Shown here: positions 1,916-63,734 of the stretch, in pieces
How positions within the stretch are numbered: position 1 is the first letter of the stretch
How the letters are laid out: the number at the start of each line of letters is the position of its first letter
IMG/VR virus record: IMGVR_UViG_3300049793_000366
Coordinates: 434,001 to 498,000 of that record
Direction: 5' to 3' (one strand)
DNA: 64,000 nucleotides
Program-made: the position numbers and the translations under genes
Notes under the pieces: model-generated
Database searches by the model: none
What the model was told of the DNA's origin: nothing
Seen by the model: only the letters and a program-made list of their open reading frames with translations

Positions 1916-2176
1916 ATGCGCTTTAAAATTATATGCAATGACAAGGAGTTCGAACACGAAGTCTCTGTTAAAAATATTACTTACTTTGGTAAACCAGGTA
2001 AGATATCAGAGCTTTACATTCAGATAGAACAACTATTGAGTCTTGACCGCAAACTTTTTGAATATCACATCGACTACTTTCAAGAAAAGATTTACATTGA
2101 GAATACTCATGCTAATTTCATGTCACACTTGCGCGAGAATAGACTTTCTAACCTTTTAGATATCGAATTGGTATGA
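1916..2176 (+). CDS. hypothetical protein, C-tag
   Basis: Ends LRENRLSNLLDIELV; abuts neighbours. Confidence 0.75.
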   Translation: MRFKIICNDKEFEHEVSVKNITYFGKPGKISELYIQIEQLLSLDRKLFEYHIDYFQEKIYIENTHANFMSHLRENRLSNLLDIELV

Positions 2177-2466
2177 TGAACAACAACTCTAAGAGACCAC
2201 ATATTATCTTGAAACGAAATCCGGAAAGGGATAAATTTATTGATGCTATAAAATCAATAGGGTTTAGGCCCAGGATGGAGCAGAAGAATGTTGTTATCAG
2301 TACAACTGATTCAAATTCTGATTCTTCTACATATACACAATTGTGGGTAAAGGGTGACTTTGAAATAAAGCTAACACACAAGAATGTAGAATTCGATGGT
2401 GATTTCTATGATTACAATGAGAGTGAAATATTATTCAGAAATTTAAAATTAAAAAACATTATATGA
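2173..2466 (+). CDS. hypothetical protein, C-tag
   Basis: Ends FRNLKLKNII; ATGA overlaps. Confidence 0.75.
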   Translation: MMNNNSKRPHIILKRNPERDKFIDAIKSIGFRPRMEQKNVVISTTDSNSDSSTYTQLWVKGDFEIKLTHKNVEFDGDFYDYNESEILFRNLKLKNII

Positions 2467-3239
2467 AAGCTTTAGTAACAGCGGGACCAACATATGAACA
2501 CATTGACCCAGTTAGATTTATTGGTAATCATTCCTCTGGTAAAATGGGAATTGAAATTGCTGAGGAATTAAAACGTAGAGGTTATGATGTAACACTTATC
2601 ATTGGACCCACACACTTAACGTGTTCGGAAAGTATTAACCGTGTTGATGTAACATCTGCTGATGATATGTATGAGGCTTGTATTAAAGAGTTCCCATCAT
2701 GTGATGTTGCTATAATGTCAGCCGCAGTAGCAGATTATAAACCAAGCTTTTGTTCTGATAAGAAGATAAAACGAAATGGTGATAACCTCACTATTGAATT
2801 AATTCCAAATAAAGACATCGCTTCTGAGTTAGGTAAAATGAAGAAGGCTAACCAAAAGTTAATCGGTTTTGCACTTGAAACAAATGATGGTGTTGACAAT
2901 GCTATTAGAAAAATCATATCTAAAAACTTAGATATGATTGTGTTGAATCAGATAGGTGAGAAGGGTGTTGGTTTTAAAGTAGATACCAATAAAATATCTC
3001 TTATAAAACTGAAACATAATTTCACAAAAGCAAACCTACAAACTATGGTTTCTTTTCAGGATATGTTAAAGAATTATCGTGAGTCACTTCTTCAAGATCC
3101 ATCAAGTACATTCTACAATGGATTAGTTAAAAATACCGAAGCTCAGATAAGTGAGTGGAAACATTTATTCATAACAACAAAAGATTTTGAAATGAAATCT
3201 AAGTCTGATGTTGCAGTTGATATAGTAAACTCATTGTGA
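2463..3239 (+). CDS. coaB: phosphopantothenoylcysteine synthetase (CoaB domain only, with C-terminal insertion)
   Basis: LVTAGPTYEHIDPVRFIGNHSSGKMG, SAAVADY, GFALET, LDMIVLN; no CoaC flavoprotein domain. Confidence 0.9.
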   Translation: MKALVTAGPTYEHIDPVRFIGNHSSGKMGIEIAEELKRRGYDVTLIIGPTHLTCSESINRVDVTSADDMYEACIKEFPSCDVAIMSAAVADYKPSFCSDKKIKRNGDNLTIELIPNKDIASELGKMKKANQKLIGFALETNDGVDNAIRKIISKNLDMIVLNQIGEKGVGFKVDTNKISLIKLKHNFTKANLQTMVSFQDMLKNYRESLLQDPSSTFYNGLVKNTEAQISEWKHLFITTKDFEMKSKSDVAVDIVNSL

Positions 3240-3592
3240 TGATTGGTGGTGTTCACGGTTATACTGGTCATTCTGTTGGTCAACAAACACCATGTGTGTG
3301 CTTCATATCATATGTTTCGCTATCACTTGAAGACCTCGTTGTACTCATAGGTATTGGTTTGAAGATAACAAGACCAGAAGTTTTAAAATTTATCAAAGCA
3401 TATTCCAAGAGTGATTCCGGTAGCAGAGCATTCAACTTTCCATTTACCGAAGAAGAATTAGAACCATTTAAATATAAAGATTGTGTAGATGGTATCGATT
3501 GGGGTGTTCGTAGAGAATATGAAAACTTACCTAAATATGAAGCTATAAGAAAGGAATATTTTAGGAATTTAAAAATAGATAAAATTATATGA
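3236..3592 (+). CDS. hypothetical protein, C-tag
   Basis: Ends FRNLKIDKII. Confidence 0.7.
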   Translation: MMIGGVHGYTGHSVGQQTPCVCFISYVSLSLEDLVVLIGIGLKITRPEVLKFIKAYSKSDSGSRAFNFPFTEEELEPFKYKDCVDGIDWGVRREYENLPKYEAIRKEYFRNLKIDKII

Positions 3593-4131
3593 TTAAAGAG
3601 AAATTAGAATTGCGTATGTACGGATTAGTTCCGTATAACATCAGTCCAATTCAACAATCAATACAGTACGGTCACTCAGTTGTTGAATATGGTTTAGATT
3701 TCTTCAACAGTGATGAATATCAAGACTGGGCGAGAAACTGAAAAACATTTATGGTTATGAATGGTGGTACAACTAATAACAACCCGAATAAATTGGGTAC
3801 GTTAAATATGCACTTAGCTACTCTTAAAGAAGCTGGTATTAAAGTTGGTGAATTCTATGAACCAGACTTGAATGATGCTTTAACCGCAGTTACATTTCTT
3901 GCTGATGAAAGAGTATTCAACAGAGAAAAATATCCGGACCTTAATTATAAATCACCACATAGATTACCAGATGATATGATTGGGTTTTCTGTTTATCGAA
4001 TGAACCAAATAACAAATGACGAAGACCACGCTAAGAAGCAATGGATTAAGTCAATCGGTGGTGAACAGAACGCTTTTCTTAGAGCATTTTTATTCACCGG
4101 GAATAATGGTAAATCGTTCCAATTCGCGTAA
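3589..4131 (+). pseudogene. peptidyl-tRNA hydrolase 2-like protein interrupted by in-frame TGA at 3739-3741
   Basis: My translation from ATG 3589: ...NISPIQQSIQYGHSV...DWARN*KTFMVMNGG...FYEPDLNDALTAV, in frame with track ORF 3751..4131; motifs resemble PTH2-like phage proteins. Confidence 0.65.
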
Positions 4132-4163
4132 TTTGCATTCTTGAGAAAATATCCTTATATTTA
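4132..4163 (+). promoter_or_regulatory. Bacteroidota-type sigma70 promoter
   Basis: TTTG-N20-TATATTTA, ATG at 4168. Confidence 0.65.
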
Positions 4164-4167
4164 CGGA

Positions 4168-4611
4168 ATGGATTATAAAGCCTACTATGCTAATTGTGGT
4201 TCTGAAAGGGAATATCCATATGATATACCGACATTAGAAGTTCTTGAATCTGATTCAGAATACATGATGTCTGTGTTCAAAGAAGTTGTACACAAGGTAG
4301 TTTTTAATGTGTGTGATGATACGGATTACAGTGATAGATTGCGTGATCCTCGATTTATGGCTACTAAGTTTTTTGGATTTACGGAGTCAATTCGCGGAGT
4401 AGCATTTATAAAATATTATAAGAAAGTAAAAAAAGAGGATAGATGGTTTATGGATTTCGTTAAAGATTTCGTTACCGTATATAAACCTAAAATAAGTAAG
4501 GATGAAAATGGCGAAACTATTCACGTAATTGATAGCGACCCAGTGAAGATACTAACACATCTTAAAGCATACAAGAGAGATATAGAATTAAAAACATTAC
4601 TAAATGAATAA
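4168..4611 (+). CDS. hypothetical protein, C-tag
   Basis: Start moved to the ATG after the promoter; ends KRDIELKTLLNE. Confidence 0.75.
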   Translation: MDYKAYYANCGSEREYPYDIPTLEVLESDSEYMMSVFKEVVHKVVFNVCDDTDYSDRLRDPRFMATKFFGFTESIRGVAFIKYYKKVKKEDRWFMDFVKDFVTVYKPKISKDENGETIHVIDSDPVKILTHLKAYKRDIELKTLLNE

Positions 4612-5350
4612 AGAACAATTAATAGCAGTATTTGAAAATACGACAAGTATAATTAACTCAACACCTGGGTTTCAATTATCAATTACGTCTAAACATAACA
4701 CGAATAGTATTTCAGTACCTCGTGGTGAAACTATTGCAAACATACAGACGATTAATTCTGATACAGTTTCAGCCGCTTTAGAGTATTCAAGAAAAGGAAG
4801 AACAGCAATTTTAAATATGGCATCATTTAAGAGACCAGGTGGTGGCGTTGCCAATGGTGCTAAAGCTCAAGAAGAATGCTTATTCAGATGTTCTAACTTA
4901 TCTAAAGTTATTTCTAATGAATTCTATCCATTGGGTGTAAATGAAGGTCTATACACAAGAGATGCAGTCTTCTTCAAGGATTTTAACTACAACCAAATTG
5001 AACCATTCATGGTAGACGTTATCACGGTTGCTGCGATTAATTTATCTAAAGAAGATAACCCTAAGGAAATATTAGATTCGTATGATGTTATTATGATGGA
5101 TAAGATGCGACTGATGTTCGATATGGCGTTACAGAATGGTTGTAAAAACATTATTCTTGGTGCTTGGGGTTGTGGTGTGTTTAGCAACAACCCAGTTAAC
5201 ATCGCGAGTATGTTTGAAGAAGTTATGATGAAGCGAAAAAACAGAGTTGATTCAACATATCACGAATGTTTCGAGAATATTATTTTTGCGGTTATCAATG
5301 ACCACAATTCGGTTGGTGATAACTATGATGTATTTAGTAAATTTTTTTAA
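4604..5350 (+). CDS. TIGR02452-family macrodomain / bacterial-type poly(ADP-ribose) glycohydrolase
   Basis: LNMASFKRPGGGVANGAKAQEECLFRCSNL and ILGAWGCGVFSN motifs. Confidence 0.85.
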   Translation: MNKEQLIAVFENTTSIINSTPGFQLSITSKHNTNSISVPRGETIANIQTINSDTVSAALEYSRKGRTAILNMASFKRPGGGVANGAKAQEECLFRCSNLSKVISNEFYPLGVNEGLYTRDAVFFKDFNYNQIEPFMVDVITVAAINLSKEDNPKEILDSYDVIMMDKMRLMFDMALQNGCKNIILGAWGCGVFSNNPVNIASMFEEVMMKRKNRVDSTYHECFENIIFAVINDHNSVGDNYDVFSKFF

Positions 5351-5351
5351 A

Positions 5352-5636
5352 ATGTATTTCTATCACGTAACAAATAAGGGAGAGAACGCAAAGTCACATT
5401 GGTTACTTGCTAAAGACGATACTGATGCGATTAGAATTGCTTCAACTGAAAAAGGCGTAGTTGACTTAGACTCATTGGAGAAGTTAAAACCATACGCTAA
5501 TATAAATAAACTAATTAAAGAAGGTAAGGCTGGTTTACTTGCCGCTAAAATTTTAGGAATGAAGGCATCTGACCTTATTGGTGGTAAAAAACCAAAACAG
5601 ATTGAAGATCCTTGGTTTCTATATAAAGAAGTATAA
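5352..5636 (+). CDS. hypothetical protein
   Basis: ATG 5352 immediately after the upstream stop; co-oriented. Confidence 0.7.
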   Translation: MYFYHVTNKGENAKSHWLLAKDDTDAIRIASTEKGVVDLDSLEKLKPYANINKLIKEGKAGLLAAKILGMKASDLIGGKKPKQIEDPWFLYKEV

Positions 5637-5640
5637 ACAT

Positions 5641-6381
5641 ATGAGAGTATTTATTCCAAAAGGTTCACACGATTTTATTTCAAAAGAAGTTTTGAATGAG
5701 AATTGTTTTGCCGCGTTTTCTGGATTCAGTCTTATGGGTTGGGAAGTTATCTTCTATGATGCTAAAGAACAACCTGATAACTTACTTCGCTCTGATGTTG
5801 TAGTTGGTTATATAACTCATGTTAAACAAGCACTGAGAAAACTCGATATTGTACCACCAACTGAAATAGATTACCCAGAAGAATTGAATGAATACTTTGG
5901 TCGTAAGTTATGGAAGTCAACATTACACACTGTTTATAATGATGAAACAATGTGGCCAGTTTTTGTTAAACCAGTATTAGGAAAACAATTCAATGGTACA
6001 CTAGTTGAAAGTCTTACAAACTTGGTAGGTCTTGGTGCACAGGAAGACAGAGAGATATGGTGTTCAGAGCCAGTTAAGTTTGTATCTGAATATCGCTGTT
6101 TCGTTCGTTATGGGAAGGTTTTAGATGCAAGACGATATAAGGGTTCATTTAAACACATACCCGATTTTAATGTCATAGAACGTTGTATAGAAGACTTCAA
6201 AGGTCAACCAGCGGCTTATACATTAGACTTTGGTATAACAGAAGATGGTCGTTCACTTCTCATTGAAGTTAATGATGGATTTGCTTGTGGTTGTTATGGA
6301 TTACATAGCATCGATTATGCTAAATTTATGTCAGCAAGATGGCACCAAATGGTTGGCTTACCTGATCCATGTATCTTCTAA
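5641..6381 (+). CDS. ATP-grasp domain protein (DUF4343/R2K-like)
   Basis: DYPEEL..YFGRK, FVKP, SEYRCFV, AYTLDFG, LIEVNDGFACGCYG. Confidence 0.8.
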   Translation: MRVFIPKGSHDFISKEVLNENCFAAFSGFSLMGWEVIFYDAKEQPDNLLRSDVVVGYITHVKQALRKLDIVPPTEIDYPEELNEYFGRKLWKSTLHTVYNDETMWPVFVKPVLGKQFNGTLVESLTNLVGLGAQEDREIWCSEPVKFVSEYRCFVRYGKVLDARRYKGSFKHIPDFNVIERCIEDFKGQPAAYTLDFGITEDGRSLLIEVNDGFACGCYGLHSIDYAKFMSARWHQMVGLPDPCIF

Positions 6382-6635
6382 TGAAAACATTAAATGATTA
6401 TAATAAGTTTGAATTCATTGAAGATGAATTGGTTTATTTAGGAGAGAGTGAGAACTTTACATATGGTAAAACATACAGAATAGAAAACGATTACGATGTA
6501 AGTGATGATAGTGAGTATAGATTTTATATGGTATCACTAAAGAATGATAACTCATTATATGAGCGTGTACCAGGTAATAAGTTATGTAAGCTATCAGATT
6601 TTAGAAACGAAAAAATTGAAAATATAATAAAATGA
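6381..6635 (+). CDS. hypothetical protein, C-tag
   Basis: TAATG coupling; ends FRNEKIENIIK. Confidence 0.75.
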   Translation: MKTLNDYNKFEFIEDELVYLGESENFTYGKTYRIENDYDVSDDSEYRFYMVSLKNDNSLYERVPGNKLCKLSDFRNEKIENIIK

Positions 6636-8218: not shown

Positions 8219-10348
8219 ATGTCACAAAACTCAGAAGATTTAAAAAAGCACCGCCTTTACTCAGAAACAGAATTCGATATCAAAGCTTCCGCATCAGACG
8301 GTGGCGAGGATGATGAAGATGAAGGTAGTATGTTTAATAAGCCAAAGGCCGACACAAAATCAAAAACCCCAGTACTCGATAATTTCGGACGCGATTTAAC
8401 AAAAATGGCTGAAGAGGGTAAGTTAGATGCCATCGTAGGAAGAGACAAAGAGATAGAAAGGGTTTCCCAGATTCTATCTCGTAGAAAGAAAAACAATCCA
8501 ATTCTTATTGGTGAGCCAGGTGTTGGTAAATCTGCTGTAGCAGAAGGACTAGCACTTCGTATTGTTCAGAAGAAAGTATCACGTTTACTTTTTAATAAAA
8601 GAGTAGTGACATTGGACTTAGGTTCTATGGTTGCTGGTACTAAATATCGTGGTCAATTCGAAGAGCGAATGAAAGCTCTTATGAATGAACTTGAGAAGAA
8701 CAAAGATGTTATTTTATTCATTGATGAAATTCATACAATCGTTGGTGCCGGTGGTGCTAGTGGTTCACTTGATGCTTCTAATATGTTTAAACCACCATTA
8801 GCTCGTGGTGAAATACAAGTAGTAGGTGCTACAACCGTAGATGAATACCGTAAGCACATTGAAAAAGATGGTGCGTTAGAAAGAAGGTTTCAAAAAGTTG
8901 TTATTGAACCAGCTACACCAGAGGAAACTCTACAAATTCTTCATAACATCAAAGATAAATATGAAGACCACCACAACGTATTCTATTCAGAAGATGCTAT
9001 TGCGGCTTGCGTTAGTTTAACTACTCGCTATATGTCTGATAGACACTTACCTGATAAAGCTATTGATGCTTTGGATGAAGTTGGTTCTCGCGTTCACATC
9101 ACTAACATAAAAGTACCTCAAGAGATACTTGACATCGAGAAAAAAATCGAAGAGATTAAAACAGAAAAGAATCGTGTTGTTAAGAATCAAAAATACGAAG
9201 AGGCTGCTAAATTAAGAGATGTTGAAAAACAATTAATCAATCAATTAGATGATGCTCGTAAGAATTGGGAAGACGACCAAAAGAACAACCGAGAGATTGT
9301 TACAGAGGAACACGTTGCTCAAGTAGTATCGATGATGACTGGTATACCAGTTACAAAGATAGGACAATCTGAAGGTAAGAAGCTAATCGATATGTATAAA
9401 GAGTTATCTGGTAAGGTAATTGGACAAGATGATGCTTTAAAGAAAATTGTTAAATCAATTCAAAGAAGCCGTGTTGGTATGAAGGATCCTAATAGACCAA
9501 TCTTCTCTGGTATGTTAATTGGAAATTCAGGAGTTGGTAAAACAGAAATGGCTAAGCAATTAGCTAAGTATATGTTTGACTCAGAAGATGCATTAATCAG
9601 ATTAGATATGTCTGAGTTCATGGAGAAAATTGATGTAACTAAAATAATTGGTTCATCTGCGGGTTATGTTGGATTCGAAGAAGGTTCAGCATTCTTAAAC
9701 AAAGTTAGGTCAAAGCCATACTCAGTAATCTTATTAGATGAAATTGAGAAAGCACATCCAGAAATCTTCAATGTATTCTTACAAATGTTAGATGATGGTC
9801 AATTAAGTGATTCACATGGTAGAAAAATTAACTTCAAGAATTGTGTTATTCTTATGACATCGAATGTCGGAACAAAAGTAGTTAAAGACTTTGGTGCTGG
9901 TGTTGGATTTGTAACTCAAGCTAAGTCAACATCATCTAATGATGATTTAAAGGGTACACTTGAAAAAGAATTGAAAAAGAAATTCGCTCCTGAGTTCATT
10001 AACCGTCTTGATGATATCATTTACTTCAAAGATTTAACTAAAGAAGATATTGGTAGAATTGTTGACATCGAATTAAATAAATCACTTAATCGTTTGAAAA
10101 CAATGGGTTACGAAGCTGTAATCGAAGAGTCTTTAAAAGAACAGTTAATTGAATCTGGTTATGATCCTAACTATGGCGCAAGACCATTGAAGAGAGCAAT
10201 TCAGAGATTAGTTGATGATGCTCTTACTGATACATTACTTGAAGAGCCAGCAGTTGGATCTACTATGAGTATGGGATTCGATAAAGAAAAGGATGAGACA
10301 GTTATTACTGTTAAGAAGCCAAAAAAGAAACCAACAAAGAATGATTAA
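8219..10348 (+). CDS. clpC: ClpC-type AAA+ unfoldase lacking the N-terminal Clp-repeat domain
   Basis: Two Walker A motifs ([16 protein letters not shown]), Walker B, short UVR-like middle domain ([10 protein letters not shown]), ClpP-docking loop GVGF. Confidence 0.92.
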
Positions 10349-10631: not shown

Positions 10632-10652
10632 CAATTGATTAATAAATTAAAT

Positions 10653-12015: not shown

Positions 12016-12284
12016 TTAACCCAACCGAAAATGAATTAGACAATTTCGTTTACTATAAGTTACAAGAAGATATAAAAAACAGTCCAAATAACGGACATAG
12101 CCCTCGTGTTAATGATGCACTTAGTGGTAAATATAAACTAATTTATTATAGATATGGTGTTGGTAGGGTCAAAGTAATGATGTACGTTGAGTCAGAAGAG
12201 AAAGAAGTAGGAGTCTGTATATTCGATGATACAGAATTTGACAATTGGTTAAGGGAAACCAAGCTCAGTCAGCTAATCAGCTAA
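12012..12284 (+). CDS. hypothetical protein, C-tag
   Basis: Ends LRETKLSQLIS. Confidence 0.75.
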   Translation: MINPTENELDNFVYYKLQEDIKNSPNNGHSPRVNDALSGKYKLIYYRYGVGRVKVMMYVESEEKEVGVCIFDDTEFDNWLRETKLSQLIS

Positions 12285-52919: not shown

Positions 52920-52978
52920 GTTAATTGTATATAAAATAGCGTCATTGTTTTCAAAAATTATCCGTATATTTACACTAT

Positions 52979-53221: not shown

Positions 53222-53222
53222 T

Positions 53223-54793: not shown

Positions 54794-54794
54794 A

Positions 54795-55211: not shown

Positions 55212-55226
55212 AGGGTATATATTTAA

Positions 55227-55258
55227 TTTGCTAATGCGAATTATTGTCCGTACATTTG
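55227..55258 (+). promoter_or_regulatory. Bacteroidota-type promoter
   Basis: TTTG-N20(...TTATTGTCCG)-TACATTTG. Confidence 0.8.
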
Positions 55259-55263
55259 GTATA

Positions 55264-55566
55264 ATGAAAAATACTATAACAATCAATAATGATGAGATTA
55301 GTACTCACTTATCATATACTCTTATAGAGAAAGATACCGCCTTTATTGGACACATCACTGCGCTAAATATACCATTCACATCACCTACTAAAGATAAAGC
55401 TTCTGATATTGCTAAAGGTCTTGTAAAAGCTTTATTTCATAAATGGGGAAATACTGGTGGTTTAGAATTAATAAGAGAGAAGATAAAGTCGTTTAATTTC
55501 ACACAGGTATATGATACGCACTACGAATATAGTTTACCAGTACCAAAATCTTCATATCAAATGTAA
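55264..55566 (+). CDS. hypothetical protein
   Basis: ATG after the promoter. Confidence 0.7.
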   Translation: MKNTITINNDEISTHLSYTLIEKDTAFIGHITALNIPFTSPTKDKASDIAKGLVKALFHKWGNTGGLELIREKIKSFNFTQVYDTHYEYSLPVPKSSYQM

Positions 55567-55880
55567 TGAAAGGCGTTAGAATAAATGAATCAGTCTGGAC
55601 ATCAGACAATGGTAATACTGGTAAAGTAGCCATTTTCACCTATGCGGGTGATTTAGATCCAAGTGCTGTATTAGAACAAGCAGTCAGAAACTATGTAGGT
55701 GATAGTAAGAAATATGTAGAACTAATGGATGCTCATATGAACTGCCCCTGGATGCGTGGCATCGTATCTGGTATAAATGATATGAGTCAGGTTGAATGGT
55801 CGGGGCAAACACTTAAACAATTTTTACGCGAGAACACAATAAATGAAATATTAAACAATCAAGATGATATTAACACCTGA
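55566..55880 (+). CDS. hypothetical protein, C-tag
   Basis: LRENTINEILN. Confidence 0.75.
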   Translation: MKGVRINESVWTSDNGNTGKVAIFTYAGDLDPSAVLEQAVRNYVGDSKKYVELMDAHMNCPWMRGIVSGINDMSQVEWSGQTLKQFLRENTINEILNNQDDINT

Positions 55881-56139
55881 ACAATTAAAGAAGTTCGAGC
55901 TTACTAAAGCTATGCACGAACCCGTACATATATGTGCGTTAAGAGTAACACCGAAGTCTTCTCAGAAGAAATACAAGCTTTATGTGCTTAAAAACGGTGA
56001 AATCAAGGATTTTAAGCTAAAATTCGATGATATTGTGTCATTGGATGTCGTTGGTGGGTATGGTTCTGGTACTATCAGCGTTGAGGATTATGTAGAACGT
56101 TCTAATGATATATGTAACTATACAAAGAATCATCAGTAA
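55864..56139 (+). CDS. hypothetical protein
   Basis: Co-oriented overlapping ORF. Confidence 0.7.
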   Translation: MILTPEQLKKFELTKAMHEPVHICALRVTPKSSQKKYKLYVLKNGEIKDFKLKFDDIVSLDVVGGYGSGTISVEDYVERSNDICNYTKNHQ

Positions 56140-56687
56140 TGTTCAGATTCAGAAAGAGTAACAATTACATCACATTAAAGGATGTTGGGTATAAAGCCTT
56201 CTTTCACTTACAAGATCCTGCTACCAATGAAGAACTTAGTAGGACTATGGGTATTGCTATGTGTAACGAGTATTATATCAATGCTCCGAACCATGTGGAA
56301 ATATTTGAAAAGACTATGCTTAGTGGAAGAATCGTCAAAAAATACACAAGCAACGATTCATATTGTAGAGTGAGAACCAGATGGAGATACGGCACCACAA
56401 ATAGAAAGGGAGAGTATGACGGTGATTCTTGGACAGAGAAAGTTGAAGAGTTTATGATGCAACCCACTCACAGAAGATGTCCTATATGTGAAGCAATATA
56501 TAAACAGGTTCCTTTCACAACGATTATAAACAACAGAAATATGGAATTACAAGAAGTATATACAAAGCTGAATAACTTATTGGATTTACAGGAACACAGG
56601 GACTTAACCACTAAGGAAGAAGCTGAACTGAAAAATCTTAAGAAACTACGTAATGAATTGGACCCTGAGTGGGCTAAACGATTATAA
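56139..56687 (+). CDS. hypothetical protein
   Basis: TAATG coupling; CPIC motif. Confidence 0.75.
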   Translation: MFRFRKSNNYITLKDVGYKAFFHLQDPATNEELSRTMGIAMCNEYYINAPNHVEIFEKTMLSGRIVKKYTSNDSYCRVRTRWRYGTTNRKGEYDGDSWTEKVEEFMMQPTHRRCPICEAIYKQVPFTTIINNRNMELQEVYTKLNNLLDLQEHRDLTTKEEAELKNLKKLRNELDPEWAKRL

Positions 56688-56704
56688 TAGTTAATATATA
56701 CTCT

Positions 56705-57160
56705 ATGAGGTATATAAAAACGTTCGAGGGTTTAAGGGCTGACTTAATTGCTATTGATGCTAAATTCGCTGATAGGAAGAAGGAGTTAGAATTAGAACTT
56801 CATAATATAGATAAAGAAACCCACGCGCTTAAAGCCAAAGCCATTCTCTCTAATAAGGAGAAGGTATCTGAGTTCGCGTTTGAAATACTTGACGAATACG
56901 ATACTACTGTTGTCTATAAGAATAAATTAGATATTCAAAGCAGACACTTCAATATAAACATTGAGATAACTCCGGATATAGACTTCGACAAACTTAAATC
57001 AATCGTATCAAGATTTGAAAAGAAATGCTTATCTGAACAATTCGCAATGAGATTCAATATCAGATACGAAGATGGTAGAAGCACACACGCTGATACCTTT
57101 AGCGATGCACTACCTAAGCTGGTGGATAAAACAGCGAGACTATCTATATTAGCCAGATAA
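56705..57160 (+). CDS. hypothetical protein, N-motif
   Basis: MRYIKTFEG; AATATATA upstream. Confidence 0.8.
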   Translation: MRYIKTFEGLRADLIAIDAKFADRKKELELELHNIDKETHALKAKAILSNKEKVSEFAFEILDEYDTTVVYKNKLDIQSRHFNINIEITPDIDFDKLKSIVSRFEKKCLSEQFAMRFNIRYEDGRSTHADTFSDALPKLVDKTARLSILAR

Positions 57161-57681
57161 TGAAGAATCTAAAACTATTCGAAGATTTTAACGAGTCACA
57201 TAGATATAACACGAGGGATTTTACATTCAGTGGAGTTCCAACGGATAGCGAATTGATAGATACGTTCATGTCTATGATAGACGATGATATTATTGTCAGA
57301 CTCAAGCGTGATTTGGATTTTGCTGTGGCTCTTAAAGGACCATCACGCACAATCAGACCAGTTAAAGAGAGTTGGGAATATACAATCAATACTGATGGTG
57401 TTTTGAATATTACTTCTCATAATCATACCGATATTGATGAGGAATCAAAGTTGGTTGGGTTCGTTGATAAGTTTCAGATATACTGTGAATCACCTCAAGA
57501 GATAGATATTTTACTAGGAAAAGAAGTAGATGATATAGCACTCGATGATTCAATCGTAAATAATGCTATGCGTAAGTTGAAGTCTTTAGAATGTGTTACT
57601 AGTGTTACGCATAAGAAGGTAACTGAATACTACTCAGTATTAATTGTACAATATAACAATCCAACGTTTATAATAATTTAA
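57160..57681 (+). CDS. hypothetical protein, N-motif
   Basis: MKNLKLFEDFNE. Confidence 0.8.
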   Translation: MKNLKLFEDFNESHRYNTRDFTFSGVPTDSELIDTFMSMIDDDIIVRLKRDLDFAVALKGPSRTIRPVKESWEYTINTDGVLNITSHNHTDIDEESKLVGFVDKFQIYCESPQEIDILLGKEVDDIALDDSIVNNAMRKLKSLECVTSVTHKKVTEYYSVLIVQYNNPTFIII

Positions 57682-57712
57682 TATTTTCAGTGTATATATG
57701 TACAGGCCGTTT

Positions 57713-57988
57713 TCATCTAAATAGTCTGTTTATTTTGACTTCTCGGATTTTTTGCAACTCAAAATTTTTTGCAGCGAACGTCTGAATCATTTGTCTACAC
57801 TGATGAATGAACTTACGCTTGAGAGCATTACCCTTCTTACTACTAATCAGAAAACAATTATCAGACCATACATACTTCTCACCGTATGTGATGTAGTAAC
57901 CAGCTTCATGTCTGCTGATTCTAATATACCGGATATGTAAATCACGAAGACCGCACCTACGTCCTATCTTAATGAGTTCTTGTTTCAT
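57713..57988 (-). CDS. hypothetical protein, C-tag
   Basis: Ends IREVKINRLFR. Confidence 0.75.
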   Translation of the reverse strand: MKQELIKIGRRCGLRDLHIRYIRISRHEAGYYITYGEKYVWSDNCFLISSKKGNALKRKFIHQCRQMIQTFAAKNFELQKIREVKINRLFR

Positions 57989-58383
57989 GGTATATGAATC
58001 ATCATGTTTAATACTACGTGTTTATTAACGAAATAATGTAGATTAATATCGGTTATTGGTATAGGCTTTGGATATATCACTCTACCTTTTGTAACTATAC
58101 TAAAGTCTGCTATACCAACTTCTACTTTTAAGTCAAGCTCAGAAAGTTTTTTGAATATCCTTATTACTTCTGACCTAAGCTGAGTTGTAAATATAATCAT
58201 ATCTTCTTCTAATATATTATCATTACTGATATTATTAAACAGTATAGGATCTATCAGTCTTATATAGCGGGAACCATAGCTTCTACCATTTTGATTATAC
58301 TTATCAATATTACTAGTGATGAAGAAGTCATATTCTTCTATAATAGTACTGAGCGTGTTAAATATAACAATACTATTGTTCAT
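57985..58383 (-). CDS. hypothetical protein, tandem paralog of the next gene
   Basis: STIIEEYDF...IRLIDP...EEDMIIFT. Confidence 0.8.
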   Translation of the reverse strand: MNNSIVIFNTLSTIIEEYDFFITSNIDKYNQNGRSYGSRYIRLIDPILFNNISNDNILEEDMIIFTTQLRSEVIRIFKKLSELDLKVEVGIADFSIVTKGRVIYPKPIPITDINLHYFVNKHVVLNMMIHIP

Positions 58384-58766
58384 TATAATCCAATAACCAA
58401 TTTAAGTATTACTCGCTTATTTAAAAATTCATTAAGGTCTACCTCTTCAAATTGTTTTGGTTCTTTAAGCCATGCCATATACATACGAATCATATAGTCG
58501 TCTAAGATTCTAATTTTAACTGGTACTTCAAATTCTAAAAGCTTCTTATAAATCTTTACTACCTCTGACTTCAGTTGTGGTGTAAAGATAATCATATCCT
58601 CTTCTCTTATAGTATCTTCGAATATTACAGTGGAAGCCGGATCTACCAGGCGTATTTCTTTGATTATTTCACCAGCATTCATAATCTGGTGACCACTCAC
58701 ACTGAAATCATACTCTTCTATGAGAGTGCTTATCGCATCTGTTATGGTTTTACCTTTCTCAGTCAT
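58383..58766 (-). CDS. hypothetical protein, tandem paralog of the previous gene
   Basis: STLIEEYDF...IRLVDP...EEDMIIFT. Confidence 0.8.
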   Translation of the reverse strand: MTEKGKTITDAISTLIEEYDFSVSGHQIMNAGEIIKEIRLVDPASTVIFEDTIREEDMIIFTPQLKSEVVKIYKKLLEFEVPVKIRILDDYMIRMYMAWLKEPKQFEEVDLNEFLNKRVILKLVIGL

Positions 58767-58770
58767 GTTA

Positions 58771-58802
58771 TAAATATACGGATAATATTCCGGATTACCA
58801 AA
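58771..58802 (-). promoter_or_regulatory. Bacteroidota-type promoter with palindromic spacer
   Basis: TTTG-gtaatCCGGAATATTATCCG-TATATTTA. Confidence 0.85.
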
Positions 58803-59096
58803 TCAGAGTAATTGGGTTAATTTCCTATCACGAGTGAATTGCTCAAAGCTCAATGGTTCTACTTGGTCGTCATATACAACCATTTTAAGTATGCGCTCGT
58901 GTATTTGGTGTATTTTGATATTATTGTATTCATCATCTAATTTACCTTTGATATCAGATAATACAAATTCTGGTGGTACATCCGAATGTAGTTCAGCGAT
59001 GTGAGTAGCGATGTATAGCATATTCTCTGAGTTATACCCAGTGAATCCATATAAATAATACTTATATCTTTCTAGTGATTCTAATGTGAGACTCAT
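58803..59096 (-). CDS. hypothetical protein, C-tag (triplet member)
   Basis: LESL..Y..YL...SFEQFTRDRKLTQLL. Confidence 0.8.
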   Translation of the reverse strand: MSLTLESLERYKYYLYGFTGYNSENMLYIATHIAELHSDVPPEFVLSDIKGKLDDEYNNIKIHQIHERILKMVVYDDQVEPLSFEQFTRDRKLTQLL

Positions 59097-59356
59097 AGCA
59101 ATTTGTTTAGCTTATGGTCGCGGATAAATTGTTCATATGGTAATAGTTCCTTCTCAGTAATGATTGACTCCATTTCATTCTCAAGACTAATGAAAATATC
59201 ATGCAGTAAAAAGCTTTCTATGGTTCTGTGTTTGGCTGTTTCAATATACTTATCTATACGTATTCTCATATAATCCAATGTCTCAGGCTTATTGAACTTA
59301 TATAAGTATTCCTGATAGGCTTGTAACGATTCTAAATATGTTATCTGTGATGTCAT
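59093..59356 (-). CDS. hypothetical protein, C-tag (triplet member)
   Basis: TYLESLQAYQEYL...PYEQFIRDHKLNKLL. Confidence 0.8.
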   Translation of the reverse strand: MTSQITYLESLQAYQEYLYKFNKPETLDYMRIRIDKYIETAKHRTIESFLLHDIFISLENEMESIITEKELLPYEQFIRDHKLNKLL

Positions 59357-59619
59357 AGTATCTGGTCTAATTTATTATCACGCATGAACTCTATATAGGA
59401 TAATACTTTACCCTTTGATATGTGTATGGTATCTACTTCATATTTTAGCTTAGATATAACATCCAACATAACTATATTTGATATAGGTTGTGTCTTGATG
59501 ATGTTCATTAAGTTATTTATCTGAACACCAAGTATCATCATAGAATCAGAGTTGCTTATATCAAATAAATATTCTTGATAGGCTTTTAATGATTTCAAAT
59601 ATGTTAACTGGTCTTCCAC
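59353..59619 (-). CDS. hypothetical protein, C-tag (triplet member)
   Basis: TYLKSLKAYQEYL...SYIEFMRDNKLDQIL. Confidence 0.8.
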   Translation of the reverse strand: MEDQLTYLKSLKAYQEYLFDISNSDSMMILGVQINNLMNIIKTQPISNIVMLDVISKLKYEVDTIHISKGKVLSYIEFMRDNKLDQIL

Positions 59620-60041
59620 TACTTGTATTCAGGTTCTATTGTAGAAATTTCATCAAGTTCTTTTTTGTTTTCAACCAACCAAATATTATAAGCTTCCATA
59701 AAGTCTTTATCCTTTAAAGCTTCTTCGAGTGGAAAATCATCACCATTATCATCTACTAATGTTTCGATGTTTAAGAATGCGCGGATGAAGTTAAGGTTGT
59801 CAATACCTTCATCACTTTCCTCTAAGCAATATCCTTTGGTTAAACAAATCCACTCTTCATTATGAATGAACATATTATCACCATCGATAACTTTAAGTTT
59901 ACCTTCTGAAATCAATTCATCGAGTAAGGCACCTAAACCATGTGGTCTAAGTATGTGGCCCGGTAAGCCTTGTCCTGTTTCTTTATACACATCTACTGCC
60001 GCTTTATAAAGCTCTTGTTTTGTCATTTCTACTTGTTCCAT
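59619..60041 (-). CDS. hypothetical protein
   Basis: Coupled minus-strand ORF. Confidence 0.75.
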   Translation of the reverse strand: MEQVEMTKQELYKAAVDVYKETGQGLPGHILRPHGLGALLDELISEGKLKVIDGDNMFIHNEEWICLTKGYCLEESDEGIDNLNFIRAFLNIETLVDDNGDDFPLEEALKDKDFMEAYNIWLVENKKELDEISTIEPEYK

Positions 60042-60749
60042 TTACCAAATTTTAGGATTAATTTCTTTTTGTTGTTTAAATATATCTTGACCAACAGCTA
60101 CCCATTGGTTCCAATTCATTCTAAGTTCTTCTGGGTGATAACCAGTCGCGCTACCGTTATGTCGTGACACATACGACATGATACACTCAGCATGAATAGA
60201 GTGATGATTATATTCGTTCTCACCGCAACCACAGGCAGTGCCTCTACCGTTATTATATTCCCATACGAGTGGAATTAAACCACAGATTTTACATGGCGCC
60301 CATGCGCTTGGATTTGTCACTCGTTTGTATGCTGAGATAGCTTTATAATTCCTACGATGTTCAAGCCATACTTTCATAGACTTAAGCATACCAGCTTTCA
60401 TTTTAACATTACGCTTGGTGATGAAGTTATCAATCTCATACTTATCTGGTATAAGATTGATGAATGTATCGGCATCCATTTCTTGTATCGCCATCACATT
60501 AGAAGCAGTGATTGTAACAGAATCACCAGCAGCTTTTCTATCCTTGAAGAACCGCGCATATTTCAAATCAGTAATACTGTATAGTGTGTCTTTTTTATCA
60601 GGGCTACCACTATCACAGCCCATGAAGAATCGTTTTTCATCTTCATCAAATAAAGCAGATAATTTATTATCGCGCTGACGTTGTTTATCAGTAATCTCTA
60701 TGTAATAGAATATGTCTCTCTTGGTAGAGTAGTATAATTTATTATCCAT
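60042..60749 (-). CDS. hypothetical protein with N-proximal tag and C-terminal Zn-binding region
   Basis: QRDNKLSALF at about residue 25; PCKICG...ACGCG...WN.W. Confidence 0.75.
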   Translation of the reverse strand: MDNKLYYSTKRDIFYYIEITDKQRQRDNKLSALFDEDEKRFFMGCDSGSPDKKDTLYSITDLKYARFFKDRKAAGDSVTITASNVMAIQEMDADTFINLIPDKYEIDNFITKRNVKMKAGMLKSMKVWLEHRRNYKAISAYKRVTNPSAWAPCKICGLIPLVWEYNNGRGTACGCGENEYNHHSIHAECIMSYVSRHNGSATGYHPEELRMNWNQWVAVGQDIFKQQKEINPKIW

Positions 60750-61047
60750 TTATTAATTGTTTGAGCTTTCTATCTCTATTCTCTGGTATATTTATCTTGA
60801 AGTTATCTAAGTTAAAATATGGTTCGCGTTGACCATATACCTCCGTGTGTATTGGTTCATTATGAATCTCATTTAGTACTATACCATACACAACTGTATT
60901 GTCAACTTTTTCTGATATAATATCTCGTATGGTATAAGTTTGTTCATTAACTGGGTACATAACACCTTTCATATCACCAGCCCCTTCAAAGTTTTTATTT
61001 GTAGGTCTTAAATAAGTGACGCTATCTCCTATTTTTATATTAGCCAT
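60742..61047 (-). CDS. small protein (KOW-like start), C-tag
   Basis: IKIGDSV...NRDRKLKQLI. Confidence 0.8.
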   Translation of the reverse strand: MANIKIGDSVTYLRPTNKNFEGAGDMKGVMYPVNEQTYTIRDIISEKVDNTVVYGIVLNEIHNEPIHTEVYGQREPYFNLDNFKINIPENRDRKLKQLING

Positions 61048-61420
61048 TGATTATATTTTCTGCGACTGTTCTGAATAAATCTTCTGCGATTAAATCGTCA
61101 ATAACAATCTCTCTACACTCCTGTTTGAATACTTCTCTGAATCTTTCATTAAGATGATTTCTTCTCCACTCATTATCTGGTGCGAGTTGGAATACACAAT
61201 CTACATTCTCACCAGTTACATTATGATGTGTGTATAAACGATAATCGGCAGTGTCGTAATTGATTTCACTATTGGTATCACCATGACTAAATACAACAAG
61301 TGTGTAGTGTTTATCAACGAAGTAATCTGGGTAGTATTTATACTCTATTGCCCAGCCAGCACCAGGGTGTGTGATACCAATTTGCACGAATCCTATATTA
61401 GTAAACTTCTCTATGAACAT
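61040..61420 (-). CDS. hypothetical protein, C-tag variant
   Basis: CREIVIDDLI. Confidence 0.75.
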   Translation of the reverse strand: MFIEKFTNIGFVQIGITHPGAGWAIEYKYYPDYFVDKHYTLVVFSHGDTNSEINYDTADYRLYTHHNVTGENVDCVFQLAPDNEWRRNHLNERFREVFKQECREIVIDDLIAEDLFRTVAENIING

Positions 61421-61647
61421 AATTTACTCAACTTATAATCTCTGATGAATTCTAATGATAGGTGTATCGTAACTTCAGCGTGTGATGTTAAACCATATCT
61501 ATCACCTGGTCTCAATCTATATTCAACGTGTTGTTTATCGTGTTCTGCTTTTAATTCATCTGGGTTGTAACATTCATATCTACAACCTACGTTACTGATG
61601 CAGTCGATGAACCACTTATCGTCCTTTTTATCTAATCTACCTATCAT
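61411..61647 (-). CDS. hypothetical protein, C-tag
   Basis: Ends IRDYKLSKLCS. Confidence 0.75.
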   Translation of the reverse strand: MIGRLDKKDDKWFIDCISNVGCRYECYNPDELKAEHDKQHVEYRLRPGDRYGLTSHAEVTIHLSLEFIRDYKLSKLCS

Positions 61648-61651
61648 GTCC

Positions 61652-61683
61652 TAAATGTACGGATAATATCCCGTATTACCAAA
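61652..61683 (-). promoter_or_regulatory. Bacteroidota-type promoter
   Basis: TTTG-gtaatACGGGATATTATCCG-TACATTTA. Confidence 0.8.
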
Positions 61684-61689
61684 TTTATG

Positions 61690-62010
61690 CTAAAATTGCC
61701 AATAAACTATCTCTTTTACGTCTTTAAACCTCTCTTTTAGCGCAATAACATACTTATTATCCAATATACAGATGTCTTTCTTATAATCGAAGTGCTTTTC
61801 ACATAATGTAATATTTTCAAAGGAATTTGTATAATCGAAGCCATCCATATGATTTGAATATACTTCAACCAGACCGTCCTTATTTACCAAAGCAATAGAG
61901 TGACAATGGTCAGTATCTTTTATAATACCTGGTATATTATTTATAACATCTGCTACGGTCATGTTTCTATACGGGATTAACTTCTTTATAACCAAACATA
62001 TTTCTCTCAA
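61690..62010 (-). CDS. hypothetical protein
   Basis: Co-oriented ORF. Confidence 0.7.
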   Translation of the reverse strand: MREICLVIKKLIPYRNMTVADVINNIPGIIKDTDHCHSIALVNKDGLVEVYSNHMDGFDYTNSFENITLCEKHFDYKKDICILDNKYVIALKERFKDVKEIVYWQF

Positions 62011-62335
62011 TCATTTTGCGCTCTGTGTAGAAGAACAATCGGAATGGTCGTGGTGGTTCTAAGTAACGCTCTACACCATCTATCATTGTTTTTATTTGAT
62101 ACTCACATAGACGGTGCTTATTACCATCAGTGTCAGTATGTGTCTTATCTTTTCGTTCAACTGTAAATTCGGTACCAAGTGGTATCAACACCGTTTTATT
62201 AGTGTTAGTTGTCCGGAATCTACTAAAGCATACTTCATTATTCAACTGTCTCAGCTTACTATCACGAACGAAGCTTTTATCTGTAAACTCACTATAATCA
62301 TATATAGTATGGTTTATGGATTTAAATATAGTCAT
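61967..62335 (-). CDS. hypothetical protein, N-proximal tag
   Basis: VRDSKLRQLN at about residue 23. Confidence 0.7.
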   Translation of the reverse strand: MTIFKSINHTIYDYSEFTDKSFVRDSKLRQLNNEVCFSRFRTTNTNKTVLIPLGTEFTVERKDKTHTDTDGNKHRLCEYQIKTMIDGVERYLEPPRPFRLFFYTERKMIERNMFGYKEVNPV

Positions 62336-62622
62336 TACTCAAATAGTTTATTTATTTTTGAATCGAGTATTATTTGTTTTATTATATCAGGTAGAAATCC
62401 AATACTCGTGTTACCTATGAATGGATTAGCTGTGCGATATATTTCAACACCCTTGTGTAATTCTTCCGCTTCTTCAATAGTCTCAACATCAGTTATGCTA
62501 TTTTCAGTGATAGTGTAGGTTTTATTATGCCCTTTGAAATTAACCGTTCGTATATTTATAGCATAGCTGGTATAATCAACAACATCACCACTTTGTATAT
62601 TCACACTTGTTACAATTATCAT
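62335..62622 (-). CDS. hypothetical protein, C-tag variant
   Basis: Ends ILDSKINKLFE. Confidence 0.75.
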   Translation of the reverse strand: MIIVTSVNIQSGDVVDYTSYAINIRTVNFKGHNKTYTITENSITDVETIEEAEELHKGVEIYRTANPFIGNTSIGFLPDIIKQIILDSKINKLFE

Positions 62623-62765
62623 TTATTCATTAACTTCTTATACAATCTGTTTAAATCTGTTTTGGTTCCGACTAACTTAGCTAACTTAAGTTTCTTCTTT
62701 TGCTTCTTACCGAGTCCAATGCCCATATCAATGAATTTGATATGTCTTTCTATTTGTTTATTCAT
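62619..62765 (-). CDS. 48-aa basic protein (absent from ORF track)
   Basis: MNKQIERHIKFIDMGIGLGKKQKKKLK...KLMNK*; ATGA overlaps at both ends. Confidence 0.6.
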   Translation of the reverse strand: MNKQIERHIKFIDMGIGLGKKQKKKLKLAKLVGTKTDLNRLYKKLMNK

Positions 62766-63055
62766 TTTGTTAGTTCATCAAGCTTAAGTGTTCGTATTTC
62801 TTCTTTTAATACTGTTTGTAGAAATCTGATATGTTGATTGTCTCTCTTTATAATGTAGGCTTCGAGTGCGTCATATAAACTCTGTGCTTCTTCGGATGAT
62901 TCAACTGGTGTCCACAACTTATTATCATTTGCCTTTGCATTTGTATAGCGTATGACATAAGTTCTGTTGTCAGTTTTTATATTCCAAAATAGTGTATTAC
63001 CACTTGGATCTTTGGGGTTCCCGCCAGTTTTAGCCATGACGCTCCCTACTACCAT
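62762..63055 (-). CDS. hypothetical protein, C-tag
   Basis: Ends IRTLKLDELTK. Confidence 0.75.
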   Translation of the reverse strand: MVVGSVMAKTGGNPKDPSGNTLFWNIKTDNRTYVIRYTNAKANDNKLWTPVESSEEAQSLYDALEAYIIKRDNQHIRFLQTVLKEEIRTLKLDELTK

Positions 63056-63369
63056 TAGTAATTGATAGTGAATGGTTCGTATGACATGATTTGATTACCG
63101 TTGTTCCAGTTAGATGTGTCTAACTGAGATTCATCATCAGTCTTTGAATTGAAGACTTGTACACAACCATTGATAATCTTTTTACCCTCTGTTATCTTGT
63201 AGGGTAGTCGGTCTTTTTTTGGTGAGCATAAGTACTCAGTTTTACTTGTTGTGTTCTTAACAAGCACTTCTGTGTCTTTTGGTGTCTTATAGATACTGAA
63301 TACTTCTTTAGATGCAATCAGTTCTTGTACTTGTTGTACGCTGAGATATCCGATGTTTGTTACTATCAT
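63055..63369 (-). CDS. hypothetical protein
   Basis: Coupled minus-strand ORF. Confidence 0.7.
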   Translation of the reverse strand: MIVTNIGYLSVQQVQELIASKEVFSIYKTPKDTEVLVKNTTSKTEYLCSPKKDRLPYKITEGKKIINGCVQVFNSKTDDESQLDTSNWNNGNQIMSYEPFTINY

Positions 63370-63734
63370 ACTAATTCGTTTAAAAATTTATTACGCTTTG
63401 CTTGTTTTAATATCTTCTCACACAAGATTATATTCTGTTCGTATTTTCTATTCGTACTATCTGGGTCAAGATGGTTCTTAATCATCTGTGAATAACCGAT
63501 AAGATAATTTTTAAATACGACTGTAAAAAAGGATTTTGGTTTCCTTTCTACACCACCGAGATTAGGGTCGAATTTATCTTCTTTCTTCTTTGTGAATTCA
63601 ATACCATTATTCAATAATATTTCTCCTATCTCTTCATGTAAATCAGTGAACTTCTTAAGTTTATTCATATAGACATAACAGTTGCTTCGGTATAAGCTAA
63701 TCAAATGTTTTTCAATATTTTCGGTAAAATACAT
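63366..63734 (-). CDS. hypothetical protein, C-tag
   Basis: Ends KRNKFLNELV. Confidence 0.75.
   Translation of the reverse strand: MYFTENIEKHLISLYRSNCYVYMNKLKKFTDLHEEIGEILLNNGIEFTKKKEDKFDPNLGGVERKPKSFFTVVFKNYLIGYSQMIKNHLDPDSTNRKYEQNIILCEKILKQAKRNKFLNELV

What the first reader, a model, noticed from the sequence alone, without database searches (positions are those of the whole stretch)
1916..63734. A shared C-terminal peptide tag on about 70 otherwise unrelated small proteins: candidate phage-wide protein-addressing system
Seen: about 70 ORFs on both strands end in R-[DEN]-x-[KQ]-[IL]-x-x-[IL]-[LI] (e.g. RDKKINKIL, REEQINKL, RDNKLDQIL, RDSKLKKLL, RDMKLDEAL). The bodies differ widely: CxC beta-rich proteins, KOW-like proteins, Zn ribbons, a two-TM membrane protein (14884), helical proteins and a DUF6794-like protein. 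Codons vary (CGC/CGT/AGA/AGG for the Arg), so selection appears to act on the peptide, not the DNA. The recognisable enzymes and all N-motif genes lack it. Inference: an amphipathic RxxxLxxLL-type helix used as a docking, sorting or degron signal recognised by one hub. Candidate hubs are the N-domain-less ClpC in this window, a phage compartment or import factor, or a host complex. I know of no described system with this tag.
Basis: partly seen in the sequence, partly recalled or inferred. Interest (0 to 1): 0.92.

Follow-up and report, generated by a model that had tools for sequence, protein, structure and literature searches.

The report
Shared C-terminal helix tag in megaphages
About four in ten genes of this piece of a 712-kb phage genome, and about 145 genes of a complete 635-kb relative, encode otherwise dissimilar small proteins that all end in the same short helix (R-D/E-x-K/Q-I/L-x-x-I/L-L), an undescribed motif that most likely docks them all to one common partner in the infected cell.

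Summary
62 ORFs in the window (about 39% of genes, both strands) carry R-[DEN]-x-[KQ]-[IL]-x-x-[ILV]-[LIF] in their last 30 residues, against 0.36 expected from shuffled tails. Eight more carry weak variants. Synonymous codons vary as in the rest of the genome, so selection acts on the peptide. The window comes from a 711,805-bp Mahaphage-like contig. The tag continues into both flanks. It marks 145 ORFs spread over the complete 635-kb genome LR745206.1, and it forms dense clusters in many other AT-rich uncultured phage contigs.

The bodies are heterogeneous. One SH3-like family accounts for 16-22 of the 62. The rest include a predicted alpha/beta fold, Zn ribbons, helical proteins, membrane-anchored proteins whose tag faces the cytoplasm, and a DUF6794 domain. 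In LR745206.1, 139 of 141 bodies are BLAST singletons. Almost none match Pfam or PHROGs, and I found no description in the papers searched.

The tag lies in a terminal amphipathic helix with one fully conserved face. The best reading is a shared docking helix for a common partner. The partner is unknown, and the ClpC-like ATPase has only weak contextual support. Self-association, capsid packaging and a modification signal remain rivals.

The parts
1916..6635 (+). Five tagged ORFs interleaved with enzymes: 1916-2176, 2275-2466, 3239-3592, 4168-4611, 6381-6635. The DFP, PARG and R2K genes between them are untagged.
   Evidence: Tags RENRLSNLL, RNLKLKNII, RNLKIDKII, RDIELKTLL, RNEKIENII. Enzymes by Pfam.
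8219..10348 (+). ClpC-like double AAA+ ATPase, 709 aa, untagged, with no Clp_N domain. It is a candidate hub only.
   Evidence: Pfam AAA, AAA_lid_9, UVR, AAA_2 and ClpB_D2-small, with nothing before residue 72. Five close relatives have a gene directly upstream that ends in a tag-like RR[DE]xxI[ND][DE][IL]L.
10635..11054 (+). DUF6794-domain protein with a C-terminal extension that carries a tag (RAENLDEIL).
   Evidence: Pfam DUF6794 covers residues 12-76 of 139, and the tag lies outside the domain.
12012..12284 (+). Tagged ORF (RETKLSQLI).
14884..15249 (+). Membrane protein with two TM segments and a tag (RDEKIKNIL). K/R residues flank both TM segments on the N- and C-terminal sides, which places the tag in the cytoplasm.
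   Evidence: Sequence. Hydropathy.
16380..21088 (.). Array of ten tagged ORFs: 16380, 17570, 17871(-), 18322(-), 18923, 19182, 19540, 19800, 20156, 20921.
   Evidence: 17570(+) and 17871(-) overlap tail to tail by 20 nt, so parts of both tags are coded on opposite strands of the same DNA.
26912..37047 (+). Main array of 29 tagged ORFs in about 10 kb, many with overlapping stop and start codons. It holds most of the SH3-like (CxC) family, and also a Zn-ribbon protein (36240-36401) and bodies that match nothing.
   Evidence: AlphaFold2 model of 33723-34013: pLDDT 84, beta strands 3-61, tag in helix 72-95.
37040..37567 (-). Tagged 175-aa protein with a predicted alpha/beta fold (RDMKLDEAL). Orthologues in other phages keep the tag.
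   Evidence: Orthologues at 25-76% identity have invariant R165 and K168. Model pLDDT 86, tag in helix 157-174, no significant fold match.
41431..49357 (.). Scattered tagged ORFs: 41431-41616(-), 44850-45116(+), 48971-49357(+).
50702..55880 (.). Tagged ORFs 50702, 50985, 52374 (Zn ribbon), 52569(-), 52979 and 55566.
57713..62622 (-). Minus-strand array of seven tagged ORFs: 57713, 58803, 59093, 59353, 60742, 61411, 62335.
28218..63734 (.). Eight weak variants: 28218, 29248, 37564(-), 49823, 50280, 61040(-), 62762(-), 63366(-).
   Evidence: Matrix scores 3.6-6.8. Individually these are not significant.

Best explanation
The tag is a modular C-terminal amphipathic helix of about 13 residues: [KLI]-x-x-[ILY]-R-[DEN]-x-[KQ]-[IL]-[NDK]-x-[ILV]-[LIF], usually followed by one or two polar residues. 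It is kept by selection on the protein. On a helical wheel R0, K/Q3, I/L4, I/L7, L8, D/E1 and N/D5 lie on one face, while positions 2, 6 and 9 vary and point away. I infer that this face docks into a groove of one common partner in the host cytoplasm. Each protein would then combine a variable body, which does or recognises something, with a constant handle that links it to a shared machine.

The partner is not identified. My preferred class is an AAA+ unfoldase or protease system such as the phage's own N-domain-less ClpC-like ATPase. In that case the tagged proteins would be its clients or adaptors. The confidence of 0.5 is for docking to a common partner; for ClpC specifically I would say about 0.15.

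Shown: the motif, its enrichment, peptide-level selection, helical prediction in two unrelated folds, heterogeneous bodies, the genome-wide and multi-phage distribution, and the cytoplasmic side in membrane-anchored members.

Inferred: docking to a single partner, and the identity of that partner.
For: - Enrichment and C-terminal position.
- Peptide-level selection.
- The upstream and downstream positions that were not used for scoring show only a short conserved core.
- The tag is helical in two high-confidence models with different folds.
- Bodies are unrelated: 53 of 60 are BLAST singletons in the window and 139 of 141 in LR745206.1.
- The SH3-like body profile recruits only 16-22 of the 62.
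- Tagged proteins include a DUF6794 domain, an L7/L12_C-like protein, and members of nine different PHROG families.
- Orthologues at 25-36% body identity keep the tag.
- In the SH3-like family, mean pairwise identity is 0.46 for the tag and 0.23 for the body.
- The same core occurs in phages with GC from 21% to 34%.
- N-terminally anchored and two-TM members put the tag in the cytoplasm.
- Hints for ClpC: both large genomes with tags encode it, and five relatives have a tag-like gene directly upstream of it.
Against: - No binding test was possible, because no multimer prediction was available.
- No receptor gene emerged when I compared tag-rich loci.
- In the SH3-like family the helix could simply be part of the fold.
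- The ClpC neighbourhoods of 79 other phages are tag-poor, and only 5 of 81 have the tag-like upstream gene.
- I did not establish whether the smaller tag-bearing contigs encode ClpC.
Confidence: 0.5

Rival explanations
1. Self-association module. The helix pairs with itself or with other tags, for example through R0 to D/E1 salt bridges. The small proteins would then form homo- or hetero-oligomers or one mixed assembly, with no separate hub.
For: It is an amphipathic terminal helix with a charged pair next to a hydrophobic stripe. No receptor gene was found.
Against: Oligomerisation helices normally drift freely. Here the same seven positions are fixed across unrelated bodies and across distant phages. 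The hydrophobic stripe is only three residues long. The motif does not match the R-h-x-x-h-E coiled-coil trimerisation motif (recalled from memory, compared by eye).
Confidence: 0.2
2. Virion packaging or ejection signal. The tag binds the inside of the procapsid or its scaffold, so the proteins are packed and injected. This would be like the T4 capsid targeting sequence or an encapsulin cargo peptide.
For: A terminal helix with basic residues three apart resembles scaffold-to-coat contacts (my own knowledge, not tested). The proteins are numerous, small orphans typical of host-takeover functions.
Against: Some members are membrane-anchored. 13-39% of genes is far too many cargo species. The genes sit among non-structural genes (translation factors, ClpC, PARG), not head genes.
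Confidence: 0.08
3. Recognition element for a C-terminal modification or processing enzyme, for example the neighbouring R2K ATP-grasp peptide ligase or the radical SAM enzyme.
For: R2K and radical SAM genes lie next to tagged genes here and beside the tag array in another phage. R2K enzymes are predicted to modify proteins (PMC4431377). The tag ends 0-2 residues from the C-terminus in most cases.
Against: Co-occurrence rests on two genomes. The distance from tag to terminus ranges from 0 to 19 residues. No modifiable residue is conserved after the tag.
Confidence: 0.05
4. One hugely expanded and fast-diverging paralogue family, in which the C-terminal helix is merely the slowest-evolving part of a single fold.
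For: A quarter to a third of the window's tagged proteins are one SH3-like family. Many others show a loose G-x-x-Y pattern. The genes are arranged in tandem.
Against: A second tagged family has a confident alpha/beta model. Other members are TM proteins, Zn ribbons, a DUF6794 domain, a 731-aa protein, and proteins from nine separate PHROG families.
Confidence: 0.1
5. A nucleotide-level signal, such as a promoter, a translational coupling site or a recombination handle, that happens to be translated.
For: Many tagged genes overlap the next start codon. Codon 7 ends in A more often than expected.
Against: The motif is always in frame. All six Arg codons are used, and third positions follow genome usage. 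It also occurs at convergent gene ends, and it is conserved as a peptide in genomes with GC from 21% to 34%.
Confidence: 0.02

Closest known systems
Tethering tails of protease adaptors, for example the C-terminal ClpX-binding peptide of SspB
   Same: A short C-terminal peptide, separate from a variable substrate-binding body, docks the protein onto an AAA+ unfoldase. Here a ClpC-like ATPase is encoded nearby.
   Different: The sequence motif is different. Here more than 100 proteins per genome carry it. Binding to any Clp protein is untested.
Poxvirus PRANC / F-box-like C-terminal motif on ankyrin proteins
   Same: A virus encodes many proteins with variable bodies and one constant C-terminal motif that plugs them into a single host machine.
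   Different: That is a eukaryotic ubiquitin system, its motif is longer, and its bodies are all ankyrin repeats. There is no sequence relation.
T4 capsid targeting sequence and encapsulin cargo-loading peptides
   Same: Short terminal peptides shared by unrelated proteins act as an address.
   Different: The T4 signal is N-terminal and is cleaved off. Encapsulin peptides are extended and Gly-rich, and sit next to a shell gene. Here some members are membrane-anchored.
PIP-box and bacterial clamp-binding motifs
   Same: They are often C-terminal. The hydrophobic spacing 4, 7, 8 matches the PIP-box, and one hub serves many clients.
   Different: There is no Gln at position 1 and no aromatic pair. 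An invariant Arg precedes the motif. The number and kind of carriers are implausible for clamp clients.
C-terminal degrons (ssrA-type)
   Same: A C-terminal peptide is recognised by Clp proteases.
   Different: Degrons need a defined free terminus. Here 0-19 residues follow the motif, and the ends are mostly D, E, N or K.

Membership tests
Any Pfam or PHROG family covering the tag | A significant profile match that includes the C-terminal motif | tested here: not met
   Pfam: no hit at or above the curated cut-off in 20 window and flank proteins except DUF6794 and L7/L12_C, both of which end before the tag. Tagged proteins of other phages gave 0 of 65 and 1 of 83. PHROGs: 0 of 53.
PIP-box / clamp-binding motif | Gln at position 1 and aromatic residues at positions 7-8 (or QL[SD]LF) | tested here: not met
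   Position 1 is D, E or N. Positions 7-8 are I/L/V followed by L/I/F, with F at position 8 in about 10%. The consensus I compared against is from my own knowledge.
ssrA-like C-terminal degron | A hydrophobic tripeptide at the exact free C-terminus | tested here: not met
   Residues after L8: none in only 8 of 60 tags, and up to 12 in others. The terminal residues are mostly D, E, N or K.
T4-type capsid targeting sequence | An N-terminal peptide removed by the prohead protease | tested here: not met
   The motif is C-terminal. Only 5 hits lie outside the last 30 residues.
Encapsulin cargo-loading peptide | An extended Gly-rich C-terminal peptide with an adjacent HK97-fold shell gene | tested here: not met
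   The tag is predicted to be helical. It has no conserved Gly except in the LGI end variant. No shell gene was recognised in the window. A structural search for shell genes was not done.
Membrane-targeting amphipathic helix (MinD/FtsA type) | A basic, hydrophobic helix with no fixed acidic residues | tested here: not met
   D or E is fixed at position 1, and acidic residues are common at -3, -2, 9 and 10.
SH3-like small beta-barrel (body of the CxC family only) | A five-stranded barrel fold | tested here: inconclusive
   The best Foldseek matches are SH3 domains, but E is at least 0.2 and TM is about 0.4-0.45. The viral library gives only uncharacterised small proteins.
Clients or adaptors of the ClpC-like ATPase | Physical binding of the tag to the ATPase | not testable with these tools
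   Only context is available.

The most novel reading that the evidence does not exclude
Megaphages of Bacteroidota use a proteome-wide C-terminal 'zip code'. One conserved helix routes more than 100 diverse and mostly orphan proteins per genome to a dedicated machine, either a phage AAA+ unfoldase or translocase or a host hub. The tagged proteins would form a large, fast-evolving set of adaptors or effectors built on a common handle. This would be a bacterial-virus counterpart of the F-box/PRANC strategy of eukaryotic viruses.
Probability: 0.35. Interest if true: 0.95.

Novelty: categorically new. Interest (0 to 1): 0.85.

Why it matters
Huge phages consist mostly of genes with no known function. 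This one short motif groups 13-39% of those genes into a single functional class, and it offers an experimental handle: a peptide that can be used for pull-downs, fusions and mutations. Identifying the partner could reveal how megaphages organise or control a very large accessory proteome. It could also supply a portable docking tag for Bacteroidota. The motif is also a simple marker for recognising this group of phages in metagenomes.

Tried and rejected
- DNA similarity of the window to known phages: no match.
- tblastn of a tagged protein against phage records: no match. A database homologue found only LR745206.1.
- Word-indexed protein searches with family alignments found almost only the source contig.
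- Profile search of solved structures: nothing.
- Foldseek against PDB and the viral library: no significant match for either model.
- Scan of 185,579 bacterial and archaeal genomes for the SH3-like family: no relative, so it is not a host or prophage family at that sensitivity.
- An HNH query to sample other parts of the source genome found only the local copy.
- Shared untagged genes among tag-rich loci: no receptor candidate.
- A tag-like gene upstream of ClpC: only 5 of 81 loci.
- Five literature searches found no description.
- Explanations rejected: DNA repeat, membrane-targeting helix, degron at the free terminus, PIP-box.
- I could not inspect model coordinates, so I do not know whether the helix packs on the body.


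Full report
SOURCE. The window is positions 637,895-701,894 of a 711,805-bp metagenomic contig, JGI 3300049793 Ga0497410_0000003. GC content is 33.7% and there are no tRNA genes in the window. The nearest records are the complete 635-kb and 642-kb 'uncultured phage' genomes LR745206.1 and LR756502.1, whose ClpC-like proteins are 67-68% identical to the window's. Genomes of 634 and 642 kb are reported among the four largest complete genomes in PMC7162821, which places all its genomes above 634 kb in the Mahaphage clade and predicts Bacteroidetes hosts. I matched these two records to that paper by length. Only 19 of 159 genes have a Shine-Dalgarno-like motif, and leader regions are A-rich, which fits that host.

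PEPTIDE OR DNA? Arg is encoded by AGA (29), AGG (11) and CGN (18). Third codon positions follow the genome's synonymous usage, and the motif is always in frame, including at convergent gene ends. Selection therefore acts on the peptide. One oddity remains: codon 7 ends in A in 49 of 60 cases against 29.6 expected, while codons 4 and 8 behave normally.

EXTENT. The tag continues beyond the window. The 8.6 kb to the left holds 4-6 tagged ORFs, including a 217-aa protein with a partial L7/L12 C-terminal domain. The 9.9 kb to the right, up to the contig end, holds about 12. The total is 78 in 82.5 kb.

I scanned the complete genome LR745206.1 in 13 pieces. It has 145 tagged ORFs against 3.65 expected from shuffled tails (maximum 7). 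That is roughly 15% of about 966 crudely counted genes. They are spread over the whole genome with several clusters, and they range from 41 to 731 aa.

Even so, 18 of 117 foreign loci held three or more tagged ORFs, among them pieces of 476-kb and 483-kb contigs and of contigs of 24-172 kb with GC from 21% to 30%. Another phage fragment has 16 tagged ORFs in 12 kb beside GrpE and IF3 genes, and a longer contig carrying the same protein also encodes DnaJ, a radical SAM enzyme and an R2K ATP-grasp. A 590-bp NCBI contig carries three consecutive tagged genes. A recurrent end variant is K-L-x-x-L-G-I.

ARE THE BODIES UNRELATED? Mostly, but not entirely. Fifteen window proteins form one family with an N-terminal C-I-K motif, a G-x-x-Y motif and an F-x-x-H-F motif before the tag. 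A full HMMER scan finds 521 representatives of this family at E of 0.001 or better in 1.84 billion proteins. Of the 152 sequences in hand, 141 carry the tag. None matches a Pfam family above its cut-off, the only names given by sources are 'hypothetical protein', and none was found in bacterial genomes. The AlphaFold2 model has pLDDT 84. It shows a small beta-barrel with a weak SH3-like match, a short helix, and then a long terminal helix that contains the tag.

A body-only profile built from the database homologues recovers 16 window proteins clearly and about six marginally. Roughly 40 tagged bodies remain unmatched. These include:
- a membrane protein with two TM segments (14884-15249);
- Zn-ribbon proteins (36240, 52374);
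- a DUF6794 domain followed by a tagged extension (10635-11054);
- a 175-aa family (37040-37567) whose model (pLDDT 86) is an alpha/beta fold with the tag in helix 157-174.

In LR745206.1, 139 of 141 bodies are BLAST singletons, 8 match the SH3-like profile, 8 have an N-terminal TM anchor, and nine match nine different PHROG families. Recognised domains are nearly absent among tagged proteins: Pfam hits are 1 of 83 and 0 of 65.

CONSERVATION. Orthologues in different phages keep the tag while their bodies have diverged to 25-36% identity. Within the SH3-like family, mean pairwise identity is 0.46 for the tag and 0.23 for the body.

ANATOMY AND INFERENCE. Outside the SH3-like family, only positions -4 to 9 are conserved. 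On an alpha-helix R0, I/L4 and L8 form one stripe and K/Q3 and I/L7 form the next, with D/E1 and N/D5 alongside. Positions 2, 6 and 9 point the other way and vary. A face that is fixed across unrelated bodies cannot be packing against those bodies. I therefore infer that it contacts something common to all of them. In anchored members, K/R residues follow the TM segment, so the tag faces the cytoplasm. That argues against a secretion or capsid-cargo signal.

My best explanation is a docking helix for one shared partner. The ClpC-like ATPase at 8219-10348 lacks an N-domain, and both LR745206.1 and this phage encode it together with many tags. Five close ClpC relatives have a gene directly upstream that ends in a tag-like helix. 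These are hints only. The rivals are tag-tag self-association, a signal for the neighbouring R2K or radical SAM enzymes (PMC4431377), capsid packaging, and one hyper-diverged family.

COMPARISON WITH KNOWN SYSTEMS. In logic the tag resembles adaptor tethering tails, viral F-box/PRANC motifs, capsid or encapsulin targeting peptides, and clamp-binding motifs. It fails the defining sequence or position features of each one I could test (see the membership table). The megaphage and jumbo-phage papers I searched do not mention it.

VERDICT. This is a real, strong and widespread feature that appears to be undescribed. Its mechanism remains open.

Noticed in passing
window, codon 7 of each tag (e.g. 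18923-19189, 30658-30927): The third base of the codon for the I/L/V at tag position 7 is A in 49 of 60 tags, against 29.6 expected from synonymous usage. Codons 4 and 8 show no such bias. This is an unexplained nucleotide-level constraint inside a peptide-level motif.
   Followed up: partly
window 4604-11054: A cluster of PARG, R2K ATP-grasp, a tagged ORF, radical SAM, ClpC-like ATPase, DUF1653 and DUF6794 with a tag. Linkage of R2K enzymes with ADP-ribosylglycohydrolases is described as a predicted protein-modifying conflict system (PMC4431377). A radical SAM and R2K pair also lies near a tag array in another phage.
   Followed up: partly
L001 19483-19872, L002 19472-19867, L011 2130-2480, L014 9604-9954, L019 9506-9871: A conserved 116-131 aa gene directly upstream of ClpC in the five closest relatives ends in RR[DE]xxI[ND][DE][IL]L, followed by about 10 polar residues. 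No orthologue was found in the window or its flanks.
   Followed up: partly
window 17570-18131, 36790-37567, 52374-52919: Convergent tagged genes overlap tail to tail by 20, 8 and 6 nt. In the first pair, parts of both tags are encoded on opposite strands of the same DNA.
   Followed up: no
L006 1-8600 (contig 629,303-637,894): The left flank encodes a class I tRNA synthetase fragment, an HNH endonuclease, an L7/L12_C-like protein that carries the tag, an RNA ligase, IF3 and an HU-like protein.
   Followed up: no
window 23055-25931, 38395-38859, 53562-55181: An untagged paralogue family of seven members (23055, 23836, 24913, 25506, 38395, 53562, 54795), plus three further untagged paralogue pairs.
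   Followed up: no
whole contig: IMG/VR holds only 507,910 bp of the 711,805-bp contig (about 203,895-711,805). Its pipeline evidently did not treat the first 204 kb as viral. I could not inspect that part.
   Followed up: no
window 24257-24481 (-); L143, L154, L172, L223: An end variant K-L-x-x-L-G-I recurs in several phages alongside the usual I-L ending. It loosely recalls the [LIV]-G-[FL] loops by which Clp ATPases dock onto ClpP. That comparison is from memory and was not tested.
   Followed up: no
window 61967-62335 (-), 12323-13045 (+), 60042-60749 (-): A few motif copies lie near N-termini or inside longer ORFs. They may mark fused or mis-called genes.
   Followed up: no
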